Of a stretch of 64,000 nucleotides of DNA, positions 55,010 through 62,289 are shown piece by piece. This DNA is from Octopus bimaculoides (lineage: Eukaryota). Where the stretch lies: contig NC_068991.1 in NCBI RefSeq assembly GCF_001194135.2, forward strand, positions 52,407,294 through 52,471,293, given 5' to 3'. The notes beneath the pieces were generated by a model. The model saw only the letters and a program-made list of their open reading frames with translations, had not been told where the DNA came from and did not search any database. A program made the translations under genes and the position numbers. The stretch's first letter is position 1; every line of letters starts with the position of its first letter.

Positions 55010-55101
55010 CGCTCGCGAAGGGATTCGAACCCGTGACCCTCAGATCACTTTTGGAATGTGTTTTAGAAAGTCTGATGCTCTACCGACTGAGCTATGCAGG
55101 T
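55010..55101 (-). tRNA. Intron-containing tRNA-Lys(UUU)-derived gene, probably a pseudogene
   Basis: ACCTGCA TA GCTC AGTCGGTA GAGC A TCAGA CTTTCTA [AAACACATTCCAAAAGTG] A TCTGA GGGTC ACGGG TTCGAAT CCCTT CGCGAGC G. D arm and anticodon stem match eukaryotic tRNA-Lys(TTT); the acceptor stem has 3 mismatches; the anticodon loop has an extra C. Confidence 0.8.
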
Positions 55102-57011: not shown

Positions 57012-59320
57012 TATTCAGTGGTCTTATTTTTATCATGTGCTTTCATTGCACTACTGAGCGCAGCTATATGTGCCTTGGGTGTATGCTGTGGTTTGTTGTG
57101 ATGCTCTTATTTTTACTGCATTGAAAGTAGGATGTGTGCGGTACCTAGTAGTGCTATTTTATGTATGTTAATATATATATATATATANNNNNNNNNNNNN
57201 NNNNNNNNNNNNNNNNNNNNNNNNNNNNNNNNNNNNNNNNNNNNNNNNNNNNNNNNNNNNNNNNNNNNNNNNNNNNNNNNNNNNNNNNNNNNNNNNNNNN
57301 NNNNNNNNNNNNNNNNNNNNNNNNNNNNNNNNNNNNNNNNNNNNNNNNATATATACACTTGTTAGTCCTGGTGTTTTTGTTATGTATATGTCTGAATATT
57401 TTTTATCACACCTAATGCGCCTACTATGTTAGGAATTGTTTCTGTTTTTAGACTCCACATCCTAGTTACCTCTATTTCCAGATCTTTATATTTTGAAAGT
57501 TTCTCCGTTTCTTTTAGAGAAACATTTTCATTTGTTGGTATTGATACATCGATTAGAAAGCATTTTTTTTTCTTGATGATTTCTGACAACTACATCCGGC
57601 CTATTGGCCTTAATTTCTCTATCTGTGTGTATTGGCATAACCCAGAATATGGTTATTTGCTCATTTTCTGTGACCTTTTCTGGCGTGTGCCTATACCATC
57701 TTTTTTCTGTTGTTATTCCATATGGTTGGCATAGTTTCCAGCGTATATAGGTCCCAACTCTGTCGTGTCTGTGAATATATTTCTTCTTAGCCAGGACTGG
57801 GCAGCCAGAGACAATGATTTGTTTCTTCTCCATCTCCACATATTCTGCAGTTACTTGTATTTCTTTTCGTTACATGTTTTTGTTAATATCTGGTGGGAAA
57901 GTTTTGATCTTGTGCTGCAATTACAGATCATTCAGTTTCTGTTTTTAGTCCTGAGCTTTTCAACCATTGTTGGGATTTTGCTTTGTCTATTTCTTTTCTG
58001 TTTAGTTTAGCCCAGTATTTGCCATGAAGGGGCTTTTCTGACCATCATTTTATCATTATCCGTTGTTGTTCCAGTTTTAGTTTGGATTTCAGTTGTTTTA
58101 CAGCTTTCGTTGTTTCTTCTTTTTCTTCATAGTTGTTAGGTACTATGACATCTTTTTTTGTATTTGTCAGCTTCTTAAAGACCGAAAACAGTTTTTTGTT
58201 TTGTTCGTGTTTTATGGCTATTTGTTTTAGTTTTCTTTGCTTCTGAAGTAGGTATTTCTGTAGTCATATGGTGAGTATTTTGTAATAGCTTTCTAGCTGT
58301 ATAAGGCCTCTTCCACCTTTGATACGTTGTATATATAACCTTTTTATGTCAGATTTTAGGTGGCGCATCCTAAATCCTATCATTATTTTTCTTGTTTTCC
58401 TGTCTATTTTGATTAGTTCATTTAGAGTCCAGTTAAGAATATTGTAGCTGTAACTTATAACTGGGATGGCCAGAGTGTTGATACCTTTATCTTGTTTTTC
58501 ACATTGAGCTCTGTTTTCAGTATTAATCTAACTCGTCTATAGTATTCTTTTCTTATCTTCTCTTTCATTTGTGTGTGTTGTATCGTATCTAGTTCATTGA
58601 TTCCTAAGTATTCGTATGTCTGGCTTTGGTCTAATTCTTTTATTTCATTGGCTTTATCTAGTGTGATGTTGCTACTCTTAGCTAGTTTTCCTCTTTTCAA
58701 AATTGCTTTGACACATTTTTGTAAGTCAAATTTCATGCTTATTTCTTTGGTAAATCCAAGTACTGTCTGTAGTAATGCTTCCAGCTGTTTATCATTTGTA
58801 GCGTACAGTTTTAGATCATCCACATATAAGAGGTGGCTGATTGTTTTGCCGCAACAGTTGTATCCACATCCAGTTCTGTTTAGCATGTCAGATAAAGGTG
58901 TCAATGCCAAGCAGAAAAGGAGTGGAGAGAACGTGTCTCCCTGGAATATTCCCCTTCTTATGGGGATGGCTTTGGTTTTTATGATTACCGCTTTTATCTG
59001 GAGCTGTAGCTCTGTCTGCCATTTATTCATGAAATGTTTTATATATTTTACGATTATTGGTGCTACCTTGTTCATTGCTAGTCTTTCTAGGATCCATGTG
59101 TGAGGAATACTATCAAAAGCTTTTCGGTAATCGATCCGAGCCAGACTTAGACCCTTCTTCTTTCTGCGGCTGTCTTCAGTTATGGCTTTATTGATCAGTA
59201 ACTGATCTTTACAGCCGCATGAGCCCTTTCAGCATCCCTTCTGCTCTTCTGGAAACAGGTTCTTTTCATCCAGATTTTTATTCATTCTCTGTGATATTAT
59301 TGCAGTAAAGGCTTTGTAAA
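57012..59320 (-). mobile_element. 5'-truncated R4/Dong-clade non-LTR retrotransposon (RT, CCHC, restriction-like endonuclease), frameshifted
   Basis: EEQKGC, DYRKAFDSIPH, RRGIFQGDTFSPLLFCLAL, HLLYVDDLKLY, YEYLGI, IVSGCPVLA...RHD, ANRPDVV...LIDVS..., EKLSKYKDL, VGALG, KIALLGTAHIL; several frameshifts and a stop. Confidence 0.93.
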
Positions 59321-61055: not shown

Positions 61056-61443
61056 TCAGCCTTATCTTATCTTCTAATAGCTTCAAAATTCAACGTTAAT
61101 TATTCATATGTAGTTGTGTATGTATTTTTCTATTCATAATTTTTATGACTGTTTGTATCATTTTTAAAAATGAATTATTTTTAGTTATTGTTGTGTTTAG
61201 TAGTGAAGCTTTAAAAATATTCTCATTCCCTTTAATCTTCTTATATATACGTACGTACATTCATCCATGCATACATACATACATATGTGCGTACGTATGC
61301 ATGCATGTATGTATGCATGCATATATATATATGTGAGTATTGTAGTTCGCTTGAAGCATTGTGTATTGTTTGTAAAGGATAAAAGTTTAGAATGGTACAA
61401 GAAATGGACTATATACCTGTTGTAATTTGGTTATCAATAGTCC

Positions 61444-61479
61444 GATGATATTTCGGAATTACAATTCCTTCTTCAGATC
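61444..61479 (-). ncRNA. Minimal type I hammerhead ribozyme motif (antisense mirror copy)
   Basis: Exact reverse complement of 61507-61542. Confidence 0.6.
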
Positions 61480-61506
61480 TTCTTGGCTGGAGTCTCCAGC
61501 TAAAAA

Positions 61507-61542
61507 GATCTGAAGAAGGAATTGTAATTCCGAAATATCATC
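61507..61542 (+). ncRNA. Minimal type I hammerhead ribozyme motif
   Basis: GAT-CTGAAGA-A-GGAAT(TGTA)ATTCC-GAAA-TAT-C-ATC: intact CUGANGA and GAAA cores, 5-bp stem II with tetraloop, palindromic AUAU stem III, UC cleavage site at 61538-61539, 3-bp stem I. Confidence 0.65.
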
Positions 61543-61717
61543 GGACTATAGATAACCAAATTACAACGGGTATATAGTCCATTTCTTGTTTTATAGTGCA
61601 TTATTGTACCATTCTAAACTTTTATTCTTTACATACATATATGTGTTTGTGTGTGTGTGTGTTTTATATATGCCAAACTGAAGATGTCTTCTATTATTTA
61701 TTTCAGGCAGTTTCATA

Positions 61718-62237
61718 ATGATGGTGAGGCACCAATTGATGCTAGTTGTAGTTCTCTTCGTACTCCTCCATGGACAGGTGTTGGCCATCATCCTATCTAC
61801 TGACACCTTTTCGCATCACTTACCGCCGGCGTCGACATCACCGTTATCAACATCACCATTATCAGTGTCATCTTCATCATCTTCATCATCTTCATCATCG
61901 TCAACATCGTCCTCATCATCATCGTCGCCGTTGGTGTCATCATCATCATCATCAACATCATCATCGTCGTCGTCCTCATCCTCATCATCTGTAAAAGTGA
62001 CAACAAACAAAAGAGACAATTTTCCACAGACCCATGATGATTTGTTTAAAGCTTTTGAAGCGAATTTGCTTCAGATATTTGGACTTAAGAATCGACCCAA
62101 ACTGAATGAGAAAACATTTGTTCCCCAATACATGTGGGATTTATATGATAGCCATAAACAGAAGAGGGATCCTTCAGCCCCCACCAGTGGACGAGGTTAT
62201 TTACCAGCCAACACTGTTCGCAGTTTCTACCACATCG
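61718..62237 (+). CDS. BMP2/4 (dpp): Bone morphogenetic protein 2/4 (decapentaplegic), first coding exon: signal peptide and N-terminal prodomain; continues beyond the window
   Basis: Hydrophobic leader MMVRHQLMLVVVLFVLLHGQVLA; FEANLLQIFGLKNRP, FVPQYMWDLY and ANTVRSFYH match BMP2/BMP4/Dpp prodomain motifs. Acceptor TTATTTATTTCAG at 61705-06; donor G|GTAAAT at 62238, phase 1, the position of the BMP2/4 intron after SF.H. The ORF track runs on into the intron. Confidence 0.93.
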
Positions 62238-62289
62238 GTAAATCAGCAACTATTTTTTTCGTTAAATGTTTTCTTTATTATTTTTTTTT

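What the first reader, a model, noticed from the sequence alone, without database searches (positions are those of the whole stretch)
61371..61633. Twin hammerhead ribozymes in a palindrome just upstream of the BMP2/4 coding exon
Seen: a ~260-bp palindrome ends ~72 nt before the splice acceptor. Each arm has a complete minimal hammerhead core (CUGAAGA, extra A, 5-bp stem II, GAAA, palindromic AUAU, UC). The + copy would be cut after 61539, 167 nt upstream of the exon, within the BMP2/4 pre-mRNA. Established: Penelope-like elements carry such minimal type I hammerheads, which lack a monomeric stem III and work as dimers, and they often leave inverted repeats; coleoids edit dsRNA heavily via ADAR. 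Inference: the sense ribozyme is locked by its own antisense arm in a long hairpin. Editing, co-transcriptional folding or dimerisation could switch between an inert duplex and a cut intron, making it a possible RNA switch on a morphogen gene. It may equally be an inert fossil.
Basis: partly seen in the sequence, partly recalled or inferred. Interest (0 to 1): 0.82.

Follow-up and report, generated by a model that had tools for sequence, protein, structure and literature searches.

The report
Inverted retroelement pair with hammerhead motif
The palindrome in front of the BMP2/4 coding exon is two inverted, truncated copies of a dispersed octopus repeat that carries a Penelope-type minimal hammerhead motif, and it is most likely an inert transposon remnant rather than an RNA switch.

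Summary
At 61371-61633, with weaker pairing out to 61367-61637, there is a near-perfect palindrome. It folds as RNA at -192.7 kcal/mol. Each arm carries CUGAAGA-A-GGAAU/UGUA/AUUCC-GAAA-UA-UC, one copy per strand. These are the only matches to a minimal-hammerhead descriptor in the window, and chance predicts about 0.065 such loci.

The "twins" are one motif seen twice, because the arms are reverse complements. The BMP2/4 transcript therefore holds one sense motif plus its antisense.

The arm is a dispersed repeat. A single, non-palindromic copy in Octopus bimaculoides (L002:11020-11166) is 91% identical. It has the same 30-nt motif and the same 3' end (TTTACA next to TA-rich DNA), and it extends further 5'. 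So the palindrome is a head-to-head pair of 5'-truncated retroelement 3' ends. That layout, the AT-rich microsatellite flanks and the motif's special features fit published Penelope-like elements.

Against an active ribozyme:
- Helix I is only 3 bp here and 2 bp in L002.
- There is no monomeric helix III.
- There is no same-strand partner for dimerisation.
- No Rfam hammerhead model matches.
- The hairpin sequesters the core.

A Penelope origin is plausible but unproven, since no linked RT/endonuclease was found. The switch idea has no support. This is a new member of a known kind, of low interest.

The parts
61371..61492 (-). Left arm. It is a 5'-truncated copy of the repeat, read on the - strand, with its 3' end (TTTACA) at 61371. 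It lacks 18 nt that the right arm and the L002 copy both have.
61493..61493 (.). Centre of symmetry. This single nucleotide sits between the two truncated 5' ends, and both arms are truncated at the same position.
61494..61633 (+). Right arm. It is a 5'-truncated copy of the repeat in the sense orientation of BMP2/4, with its 3' end (TTTACA) at 61633. It is 91% identical to L002:11020-11166 of O. bimaculoides.
61510..61539 (+). Minimal hammerhead motif, sense copy. It reads CUGAAGA, bulged A, helix II GGAAU/AUUCC with loop UGUA, GAAA, U-A, then U16.1 and C17. The predicted cut falls after 61539.
61447..61476 (-). The same minimal hammerhead motif on the - strand, antisense to BMP2/4. The predicted cut falls after 61447 on the - strand.
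61507..61509 (+). 5' strand of the only possible helix I (GAU). It would pair with AUC at 61540-61542, giving 3 bp.
61242..61330 (.). TA/TACA/TGCA-type microsatellite about 40 nt upstream of the insertion. It marks the AT-rich, low-complexity target context.
61634..61670 (.). TA/TG-type microsatellite lying immediately against the right 3' end of the insertion.
61707..62238 (+). First coding exon of a BMP2/4-type TGF-beta family gene. The acceptor TTTCAG|GC is at 61706/61707, the ATG at 61718, and the donor near 62238/62239 (CATCG|GTAAAT).

Best explanation
The 263-bp palindrome is a head-to-head pair of severely 5'-truncated 3'-terminal fragments of a dispersed octopus retroelement family. 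Each fragment is about 122-140 nt long. The fragments sit in AT-rich, microsatellite-like DNA about 72 nt upstream of the first coding exon of BMP2/4.

The family's 3' region carries a Penelope-type minimal type I hammerhead motif about 98 nt from its 3' end. For that reason each arm shows the motif, one copy per strand.

The most likely origin is a single retrotransposition event by Penelope-like machinery. That machinery cuts and extends both target strands, and the perfect symmetry about one central base suggests that the cDNA snapped back on itself. The two 3' ends therefore face outward.

Since then the arms have diverged by about 5%, and the left arm has lost 18 nt. At this locus the motif is a passenger. 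The pre-mRNA contains one sense motif and its perfect antisense. It has no same-strand partner for the dimer such motifs need and only a 3-bp helix I. It is buried in a hairpin of about -193 kcal/mol. Self-cleavage of the BMP2/4 transcript is therefore not expected.

**Shown:** the palindrome, the motif, the existence of the repeat family, the constant 3' end, the variable 5' end, and the hairpin energy.

**Inferred:** the Penelope affiliation, the mechanism of formation, the lack of activity, and the position inside an intron.
For: - The palindrome and its symmetry are seen. The arms differ at 6 of 126 positions plus an 18-nt deletion, so this is an aged genomic feature and not a fold-back assembly artefact.
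- A translated-arm search hit an O. bimaculoides protein model. Its locus L002 has one non-inverted copy, 91% identical over 147 nt.
- That copy ends at the same TTTACA next to (TA)n and continues further 5' than the window arms. The unit is therefore the arm and not the palindrome, and copies are anchored at the 3' end and truncated at the 5' end.
- The 30-nt motif is identical in all three copies. None of the 12 substitutions fall in it (P = 0.03).
- The motif shows the non-descriptor features of PLE min-HHRs: an extra nucleotide between 9 and 10.1, G10.1-C11.1, and a palindromic 15.2/16.2. The same paper reports pairs on opposite strands 100-700 bp apart (PMC4209133).
- Penelope-like elements (PLEs) are described as highly 5'-truncated, often with an adjacent inverted 5'-truncated copy, and as biased toward microsatellite targets (PMC8557442).
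- The Anolis element PAc cleaves AT-rich DNA and extends both strands. Its hammerhead cut site lies 85-92 nt upstream of the RT start that defines the 3' end (PMC11167929). Here that distance is 98 nt.
- Penelope families are abundant and recently active in Octopus (PMC13282606).
- Arguments against activity: hairpin of -192.7 kcal/mol; helix I of 3 bp here and 2 bp in L002; an alternative CUGA:UCGG pairing in the isolated arm; and the reported low or absent in vitro cleavage of such motifs as monomers.
Against: - No RT/GIY-YIG ORF or pLTR could be linked to the family. The nearby reverse transcriptase at 58458-59228 (-) gave only a generic RVT_1 hit, and the arm matches nothing else in the window.
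- Rfam hammerhead models give no hit at E<=10, in the palindrome or in the single L002 copy.
- Helix II has 5 bp and helix I has 2-3 bp. Both are shorter than the 6-8 bp and 4-5 bp reported for most PLE min-HHRs.
- In PAc the ORF starts at stem II, whereas here no ATG or ORF follows the motif.
- Only three copies were available, and two of them are not independent. Family-wide conservation and covariation are therefore untested.
- No clear target-site duplication and no 30-40-bp 'tail' were seen.
- A chance hammerhead-like core in a SINE or LINE tail is not excluded.
Confidence: 0.6

Rival explanations
1. The repeat is an ordinary SINE or LINE 3' fragment, or another retroelement unrelated to PLEs. 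On this reading the CUGAAGA...GAAA arrangement with a 5-bp hairpin is a fortuitous hammerhead look-alike that was never a ribozyme. The inverted pair would have arisen by template switching during retrotransposition or by a later inverted duplication.
For: - No Rfam hammerhead hit was found.
- Helix I is only 2-3 bp and is not conserved between copies. G2.3 in the window is U in L002.
- The relaxed descriptor is expected by chance about 0.065 times per 58 kb, which means thousands of times per genome.
- SINEs make up about 12% of Octopus genomes, with hundreds of unclassified families.
- No PLE ORF could be linked to the family.
- Other stretches of the arm are also invariant among the three copies.
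Against: - The motif has four features that are not required by chance and are characteristic of PLE min-HHRs: the bulged nucleotide, G10.1-C11.1, a palindromic 15.2/16.2, and a cut site about 90-100 nt from the 3' end.
- The strict descriptor never occurred in 23 Mb of simulated sequence.
- The copies have no poly(A) or simple-repeat tail of their own.
- L1-type twin priming does not produce two full copies of the same 3' region. This last point rests on established knowledge.
Confidence: 0.25
2. The sense hammerhead in the BMP2/4 5' intron would be conditionally released from the hairpin by co-transcriptional folding, ADAR editing or intermolecular dimerisation. It would then cut the pre-mRNA and tune morphogen output.
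For: - The core nucleotides are all intact, in sense orientation, 167 nt upstream of the acceptor.
- Intronic hammerheads that act on mRNA biogenesis exist in amniotes (cited in PMC7229834).
- The left arm is transcribed first, so the hairpin cannot form until the right arm emerges.
Against: - The antisense arm is transcribed before the ribozyme and lies only 17 nt from it across the loop. The hairpin (-192.7 kcal/mol) therefore zips up as the motif emerges.
- There is no helix III and no same-strand partner.
- Helix I is only 3 bp.
- Inosines at A6, A9, A13, A14 or A15.1 would inactivate the core.
- PLE min-HHRs cleave poorly even as engineered dimers.
- The arms have been drifting apart.
- A sister copy lies, apparently uncut, inside an annotated mRNA exon.
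- A distant cephalopod has nothing at this site.
Confidence: 0.03
3. The ribozyme motif is irrelevant, but the roughly 125-bp intronic hairpin itself has an effect. It could act as an ADAR hyper-editing substrate or as a hairpin-RNA (endo-siRNA or miRNA-like) precurser. It could also alter splicing, since the arm carries usable splice signals.
For: - The duplex is very long and nearly perfect.
- Generic long-hairpin miRNA models score on it, though far below their gathering thresholds.
- The sister copy in L002 is exonised using a GT donor (ACAACAG|GTATAT) that the window's right arm retains as ACAACGG|GTATAT.
- Inverted repeats are the main ADAR substrates across Metazoa (title and abstract of PMC5625713).
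Against: - There is no expression, editing or small-RNA data.
- The Rfam scores (74 against a threshold of 211 bits) reflect hairpin shape only.
- No conservation could be tested.
Confidence: 0.08
4. The palindrome is an assembly or library artefact, that is, a chimeric fold-back.
For: The window is a gapped short-read-style scaffold with 17 runs of N. Palindromes are a known type of artefact.
Against: The arms differ by 6 substitutions and an 18-nt indel. The outer ends coincide with the true 3' end of the repeat family as seen in L002.
Confidence: 0.02

Closest known systems
Minimal type I hammerhead motifs (min-HHRs) of metazoan Penelope-like elements (Cervera & de la Pena 2014, PMC4209133)
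   Same: - The CUGANGA and GAAA boxes are intact.
- There is an unpaired nucleotide between A9 and 10.1.
- G10.1-C11.1 closes helix II.
- There is no monomeric helix III, and 15.2/16.2 is palindromic (AUAU), so the motif can work only as a dimer.
- Most genomic copies are scattered, truncated single motifs or opposite-strand pairs a few hundred bp apart.
   Different: - Helix II has 5 bp rather than 6-8.
- Helix I has 3 bp here and 2 bp in the sister copy, rather than 4-5. This is comparable only to the atypical D. virilis variant.
- No pLTR or RT-EN context has been shown.
- The two motifs are only 33 nt apart, across a perfect palindrome centre.
Penelope-like element insertion architecture (Craig et al. 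2021, PMC8557442; PAc of Anolis, PMC11167929)
   Same: - Copies are heavily 5'-truncated and have a fixed 3' end.
- There is an adjacent inverted 5'-truncated copy.
- The target is AT-rich, microsatellite-like DNA.
- The hammerhead cut site lies about 90-100 nt upstream of the insertion's 3' end.
- The element has no poly(A) tail.
   Different: - No full-length partner, no partial tandem and no 30-40-bp tail were seen.
- No ORF starts at stem II.
- Both arms stop at exactly the same base, which points to snap-back copying rather than two independent cDNAs.
Non-LTR retrozymes and SINE-like hammerhead repeats (Schistosoma Sm-alpha, newt satellite 2, mussel and axolotl retrozymes; PMC7229834)
   Same: These are short non-autonomous repeats that carry a type I hammerhead with a weak, palindromic helix III that needs dimerisation. 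A 2026 preprint proposes them as PLE derivatives.
   Different: - Those elements occur as head-to-tail tandem repeats, which supply the same-strand partner and yield circular RNAs.
- They have 6-bp helix I and loop-loop contacts, and they match Rfam Hammerhead_1-type models.
- The element here is inverted rather than tandem, and Rfam finds nothing.
- In vertebrates the same preprint reports them as excluded from introns.
Intronic and UTR hammerheads with proposed gene-regulatory roles (amniote HH9/HH10; discontinuous Clec2 3'UTR hammerhead)
   Same: A hammerhead motif lies in sense orientation inside a protein-coding transcript.
   Different: - Those are complete, stable three-helix ribozymes.
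- They are ultraconserved at orthologous sites and are recognised by Rfam models.
- This one is a truncated transposon copy lacking helices I and III, and its conservation is untested.
MITE / foldback DNA transposon
   Same: It is a short AT-rich palindromic insertion in an intron.
   Different: - The related copy in L002 is a single arm with no inverted partner.
- No target-site duplication was found.
- The arms are full-length inverted duplicates meeting at one base, rather than terminal inverted repeats around a core.

Membership tests
Hammerhead ribozyme (any type) | Conserved catalytic core: C3 U4 G5 A6 N7 G8 A9, G12 A13 A14, A15.1-U16.1, and H17 at the cleavage site | tested here: met
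   The sequence is CUGAAGA ... GAAA-UA-UC at 61510-61539 (+) and 61476-61447 (-). It is identical in L002.
Hammerhead ribozyme (any type) | Three helices around the core: I, II and III | tested here: not met
   Helix II has 5 bp and forms in the MFE of the isolated arm. Helix I is only 3 bp (GAU/AUC) in the window and 2 bp in L002. Helix III cannot form in a monomer, because A15.1-U16.1 would close a 2-nt loop. It would exist only in a same-strand dimer, and none is present.
Hammerhead ribozyme (any type) | Recognition by the curated Rfam covariance models for the hammerhead families | tested here: not met
   There was no hammerhead hit at the gathering threshold in the whole window. There was none at E<=10 in 61300-61720 or in L002:10600-11400 (47). 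Caveat: these models expect helices I and III, so they may miss min-HHRs in general, and I could not calibrate this.
Hammerhead ribozyme (any type) | Site-specific self-cleavage giving 2',3'-cyclic phosphate and 5'-OH ends | not testable with these tools
   This needs in vitro transcription and cleavage assays or end-specific RNA-seq.
PLE minimal hammerhead (min-HHR) | Unpaired nucleotide between A9 and 10.1 | tested here: met
   There is an extra A at 61517. The feature is defined in PMC4209133.
PLE minimal hammerhead (min-HHR) | G10.1-C11.1 pair at the base of helix II | tested here: met
   The sequence is GGAAU...AUUCC.
PLE minimal hammerhead (min-HHR) | No helix III or loop 3, with palindromic 15.2/16.2 so that two motifs form an extended helix III | tested here: met
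   GAA-AUAU-C: the stretch AUAU is self-complementary.
PLE minimal hammerhead (min-HHR) | Long helix II (6-8 bp) and helix I of 4-5 bp | tested here: not met
   Helix II has 5 bp. Helix I has 3 bp in the window and 2 bp in L002. Only the atypical D. virilis variant has so short a helix I.
PLE minimal hammerhead (min-HHR) | Genome-wide consensus families with covariation in the helices | tested here: inconclusive
   Only 3 copies were retrievable, and the motif is invariant in all of them. None of 12 substitutions fall in it (P = 0.03). No covariation can be assessed.
PLE minimal hammerhead (min-HHR) | Location in the pseudo-LTR of an element encoding RT plus a GIY-YIG endonuclease | not testable with these tools
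   No octopus genome collection is searchable by DNA. No PLE ORF lies next to either copy.
Penelope-like element insertion | Constant 3' end with variable 5' truncation | tested here: met
   All three copies end at TTTACA. The window arms start 16 nt upstream of the motif. The L002 copy has further sequence 5' of that point, up to about 60 nt before a (CAT)n run, although its 5' boundary was not mapped.
Penelope-like element insertion | Adjacent inverted 5'-truncated copy (head-to-head, 3' ends outward) | tested here: met
   The feature is described in PMC8557442.
Penelope-like element insertion | AT-rich or microsatellite target | tested here: met
   TA/TG/TACA repeats flank the window insertion, and (TA)n abuts the L002 copy.
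Penelope-like element insertion | Optional 30-40-bp tail at one end | tested here: inconclusive
   All three 3' ends are flush at TTTACA, so no tail is seen. The tail is optional, so this says little.
MITE / foldback transposon | Terminal inverted repeats present in every copy, with target-site duplication | tested here: not met
   The L002 copy is a single arm with no inverted partner within 1.2 kb. There is no flush direct repeat at the window insertion.

The most novel reading that the evidence does not exclude
The intact sense hammerhead core in the 5' intron of BMP2/4 could be conditionally active. For example, it might be assisted by a Penelope-encoded protein, as reported for the protein-assisted PAc hammerhead, or it might act during the short co-transcriptional window. 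Its competition with the antisense arm, or with ADAR editing of the hairpin, would then tune how much BMP2/4 pre-mRNA survives in one octopus lineage. A weaker but still new variant is that the hairpin acts as an editing sponge, a small-RNA source or a cryptic exon that modulates BMP2/4.
Probability: 0.04. Interest if true: 0.8.

Novelty: new member of a known kind. Interest (0 to 1): 0.22.

Why it matters
If the best explanation is right, this is routine genome furniture. It is one more truncated, inverted copy of a hammerhead-bearing retroelement of the kind already catalogued by the thousand in other animals. Its closeness to a developmental gene would be incidental.

It has modest value in three respects:
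- It points to an octopus repeat family with a Penelope-type minimal hammerhead that I did not find described for cephalopods in the literature searched.
- The perfectly symmetric head-to-head junction is a clean example for models in which Penelope-like elements prime on both strands or snap back.
- A sister copy has been exonised into an ALKBH2 gene model, which shows that the family can donate splice sites.

Only if cleavage or editing at this site were shown in vivo would it bear on ribozyme-based gene control in animals.

Tried and rejected
**Searches that led nowhere.**
1. Rfam at gathering threshold on the whole window, then at E<=10 on 61300-61720 and on L002:10600-11400, gave no hammerhead. 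It gave only generic long-hairpin miRNA models far below threshold. I reject the miRNA labels as effects of hairpin shape.
2. I looked for orthologous BMP2/4 loci in other Octopus species. Two protein searches with exon 1 returned only distant cephalopod-like sequences at 34-58% identity. The exact-product look-up found nothing. The one long locus obtained, L001, aligns only over the exon and the acceptor and has no palindrome. It is too distant to date the insertion.
3. I looked for more family copies. BLAST and nhmmer over the window, L001 and L002 found none beyond the three known. A metagenome scan with a 26-nt motif string gave 0 hits.
4. A full-text search for the helix II string gave 0 papers. 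Supplements of the two key PLE papers are not held.

**Ideas considered and rejected.**
5. MITE or foldback reading: rejected, because the L002 copy is a single arm.
6. Target-site duplication: only an imperfect, non-flush TGTGT(A)TTGT repeat in microsatellite-like DNA, which is not convincing.
7. PLE coding remnants next to the copies: none in L002 upstream frames. The window's nearby RT and APE-type endonuclease ORFs gave only generic RVT_1 and Exo_endo_phos hits, and they share no sequence with the arm.
8. Long-range helix I formed by the left arm: rejected on topology. The 5' strand of helix I must abut C3, whereas here about 60 nt of hairpin intervene.
9. Assembly artefact: rejected because the arms have diverged.

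I did not run the representative-library protein search. The word-indexed search with all six frames of the arm had found only 6 candidates and 1 hit.
Full report
**1. What is in the sequence.**

The region 61371-61633 is a near-perfect palindrome. The inner arms, 61397-61492 and 61494-61589, are 96% complementary and are separated by one base (61493). Pairing continues outward to 61367/61637. The element proper starts with TGTAAAGGA at 61371 and ends with CTTTACA at 61633.

Aligned arm against arm, there are 6 substitutions in 126 columns. The left arm also lacks 18 nt, and the deleted stretch is flanked by TTGT microhomology. Transcribed, 61360-61645 folds into one hairpin of -192.7 kcal/mol, against -53.9 +/- 4.3 for shuffles.

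Downstream, TTTCAG|GC at 61706/61707 is followed by ATG at 61718 and an open frame to a GT donor near 62238. The product has a signal peptide, a long poly-Ser tract and the ...LPANTVRSFYHIG segment. It hits Pfam TGFb_propeptide at 31 bits against a cutoff of 25.8. From general knowledge, the NTVRSF(H/Y)H box is typical of BMP2/4/Dpp propeptides.

The acceptor and the 11 nt before the ATG are conserved in a distant cephalopod-like locus, L001. This supports a real 3' splice site. The upstream non-coding exon was not seen, so the status of this region as an intron is inferred.

**2. The motif.**

On the + strand, 61510-61539 reads CUGAAGA-A-GGAAU-UGUA-AUUCC-GAAA-UA-UC. The reverse complement of the left arm gives the identical string on the - strand at 61476-61447.

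All invariant hammerhead core positions are present. Helix II is 5 bp and is closed by G10.1-C11.1. One extra A separates A9 from 10.1. A15.1-U16.1 would enclose only UA, so a monomer has no helix III. AUAU is self-complementary. Helix I is limited to GAU/AUC, 3 bp.

My descriptor finds only these two sites in the window. In 400 simulated 58-kb sequences, the relaxed form occurred 0.065 times per sequence. The strict form (stem II of at least 5 bp, palindromic 15.2/16.2, helix I of at least 3 bp) never occurred.

Two qualifications apply. First, the two motifs are one observation, because the arms are reverse complements. Second, thousands of relaxed chance hits are expected in a genome of several Gb. 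No Rfam hammerhead model reports anything, even at E<=10 in a 421-nt search.

**3. The arm is a dispersed repeat, and the palindrome is not the unit.**

I translated the arm in all frames and searched the protein collection. One hit came back, an O. bimaculoides ALKBH2 model whose N-terminus contains ...RISEEGIVIPKYHQTIDNQITT..., which is the arm in its sense frame.

The locus of that model (L002, GCA_001194135.2 CM046626.1) has a single copy at 11020-11166, 91% identical to the right arm over 147 nt. It has no inverted partner. It contains the 18 nt that the left arm lacks, so the left arm suffered a deletion.

The L002 copy ends at the same TTTACA, directly followed by (TA)n. It also has sequence 5' of the point where the window arms meet, up to about 60 nt before a (CAT)n run. 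Its true 5' boundary was not mapped.

The family is thus anchored at the 3' end and variably truncated at the 5' end, which is the signature of target-primed reverse transcription. The 30-nt motif is identical in all three copies, while 12 substitutions fall elsewhere (P = 0.03). That is suggestive, but weak with only three copies, two of which share an origin.

**4. Which kind of element.**

Published descriptions fit in several independent ways.

- Cervera & de la Pena (PMC4209133) define metazoan PLE min-HHRs by the features seen here: no helix III, palindromic 15.2/16.2, a nucleotide between 9 and 10.1, and conserved G10.1-C11.1.
- The same authors note that most genomic copies are scattered single motifs or opposite-strand pairs 100-700 bp apart.
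- Craig et al. (PMC8557442) describe PLE insertions as highly 5'-truncated, often with an adjacent inverted 5'-truncated copy, and biased to microsatellites.
- The Anolis PLE protein cleaves AT-rich DNA and, unlike R2 and L1, extends both strands.
- Its RT start, which defines the 3' end of the insertion, lies 111-118 nt into the ORF, and the hammerhead cut lies at +26. That places the cut 85-92 nt from the 3' end (PMC11167929). Here the distance is 98 nt, or 80 nt in the deleted arm.
- Penelope families are abundant and recently active in Octopus (PMC13282606).

The window insertion sits between TA/TACA/TG microsatellites.

Several points count against membership:
- Helix II has 5 bp and helix I has 3 bp, or 2 bp in L002 where G2.3 is U. 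Both are shorter than usual.
- No ORF starts at stem II.
- No tail or target-site duplication is evident.
- No RT/GIY-YIG element could be linked to the family. The nearby RT at 58458-59228 and the endonuclease at 50459-50992 gave only generic RVT_1 and Exo_endo_phos hits, and they share nothing with the arm.

I therefore file the element as working like, and probably derived from, a PLE-type hammerhead element. The defining genomic context remains untested.

**5. How the palindrome arose (inferred).**

Both arms stop at exactly the same base, and their 3' ends face outward. Two independent truncated cDNAs would rarely end at the same nucleotide. The better fit is a single cDNA that snapped back and copied itself, or a template switch between the two primed strands during one PLE-type insertion.

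Two full copies of the same 3' region are not what L1-style twin priming gives (general knowledge). I used the octopus calibration quoted, in which a Jukes-Cantor distance of 0.09 corresponds to about 25 My. About 5% divergence between arms that began identical then suggests an age of roughly 5-10 My. That is younger than the O. bimaculoides / O. vulgaris split of 13-33 My. The orthologous site in those species is therefore predicted to be empty. I could not test this.

**6. Does it act on BMP2/4?**

Nothing supports that, and several points argue against it.

- The transcript carries one sense motif and its antisense, not two ribozymes. The dimer these motifs need has no same-strand partner.
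- The antisense arm is transcribed first and lies 17 nt from the motif across the loop. The -193 kcal/mol duplex therefore forms as the motif emerges.
- Even the isolated arm is predicted to pair UCUGA with UCGGA, at -7.5 kcal/mol, rather than adopt the hammerhead fold, at -4.5 kcal/mol.
- ADAR editing targets adenosines, and the core depends on A6, A9, A13, A14 and A15.1. Editing would disable the motif rather than release it (an inference from established hammerhead biochemistry).
- PLE min-HHRs show no monomer activity and only weak activity as engineered dimers. No reads ending at the PAc cut site were found in vivo.
- The sister copy in L002 forms an 80-nt exon (11017-11096) of an annotated mRNA model that contains the whole motif. 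If the model reflects real transcripts, the motif is not cutting efficiently there.
- The arms are diverging from each other.

**7. Verdict.**

A PLE-type minimal hammerhead in an inverted retroelement remnant is likely, and the hairpin lock is correct. The 'twin ribozyme' and 'RNA switch' readings are not supported.

The most likely account is an inert, fairly young, head-to-head pair of truncated retroelement ends (confidence about 0.6). The main rival is a fortuitous hammerhead look-alike in a non-PLE SINE or LINE tail (about 0.25).

This is a new member of a known kind, of low interest. It would rise sharply only if in vivo cleavage, editing-dependent regulation or deep conservation were shown.

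Noticed in passing
L002:11017-11096 (O. bimaculoides CM046626.1, ALKBH2 gene model P0005): A sister copy of the repeat is exonised. An 80-nt exon runs from acceptor ...TAGCAG|AGACTCC to donor ACAACAG|GTATAT and encodes RLHLRISEEGIVIPKYHQTIDNQITT. It contains the entire hammerhead motif in sense orientation.
   Followed up: partly
window 61494-61570 (+): The right arm keeps the same GT donor context used in L002 (ACAACGG|GTATAT at 61568/61569). It also has an acceptor-like CTCCAG| at 61499 after a pyrimidine-rich run. It could therefore supply a cryptic 5'UTR exon to BMP2/4.
   Followed up: no
window 55010-55101 (-): Rfam tRNA hit of 38.8 bits, with a 22-nt insertion after the anticodon stem and several mispaired acceptor-stem positions. 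ARAGORN calls no tRNA anywhere in the window. It could be a tRNA-derived SINE head or an intron-containing tRNA gene.
   Followed up: partly
window 61860-61990 (+): The BMP2/4 propeptide contains a very long poly-Ser/Thr tract encoded by TCA/TCG/TCC triplet repeats. The decapodiform-like homologues P0001 and P0002 lack it and have a short Pro-rich stretch instead.
   Followed up: no
window 58458-59228 (-) and 50459-50992 (-): Retrotransposon-derived ORF fragments, a reverse transcriptase (RVT_1, E = 5e-23) and an APE-type endonuclease (Exo_endo_phos, E = 6e-11), lie 2-11 kb upstream of the palindrome. They share no sequence with it.
   Followed up: partly
window 61588-61605 vs left arm around 61402: The left arm lacks 18 nt (TTGTTTTATAGTGCATTA) that are present in the right arm and in L002. 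The deletion is bounded by TTGT direct repeats, which is consistent with a microhomology or slippage deletion.
   Followed up: yes
window 61242-61330: A self-complementary TACA/TGCA/TATG microsatellite block, reported as inverted repeats at 79-83% complementarity, lies just upstream of the insertion. It also produces spurious miRNA-model hits (mir-297, mir-1277).
   Followed up: no
window 61679-61685 (+): A second CTGAAGA box lies 22 nt upstream of the acceptor. It has no GAAA box or helix II after it, which shows how easily half-cores arise by chance.
   Followed up: yes
L001 (ENA ERZ21867824 ctg122285l, 361 kb): A contig from a metagenome assembly carries a two-exon BMP2/4-like gene (TGFb_propeptide plus TGF_beta). 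Its first exon and acceptor align to the window at 66-77% identity. It is evidently cephalopod-like host DNA inside a metagenome.
   Followed up: partly
window, whole: There are 17 runs of N totalling 5774 bases. Many long 'ORFs' listed mechanically span these gaps or microsatellites and are not genes.
   Followed up: yes
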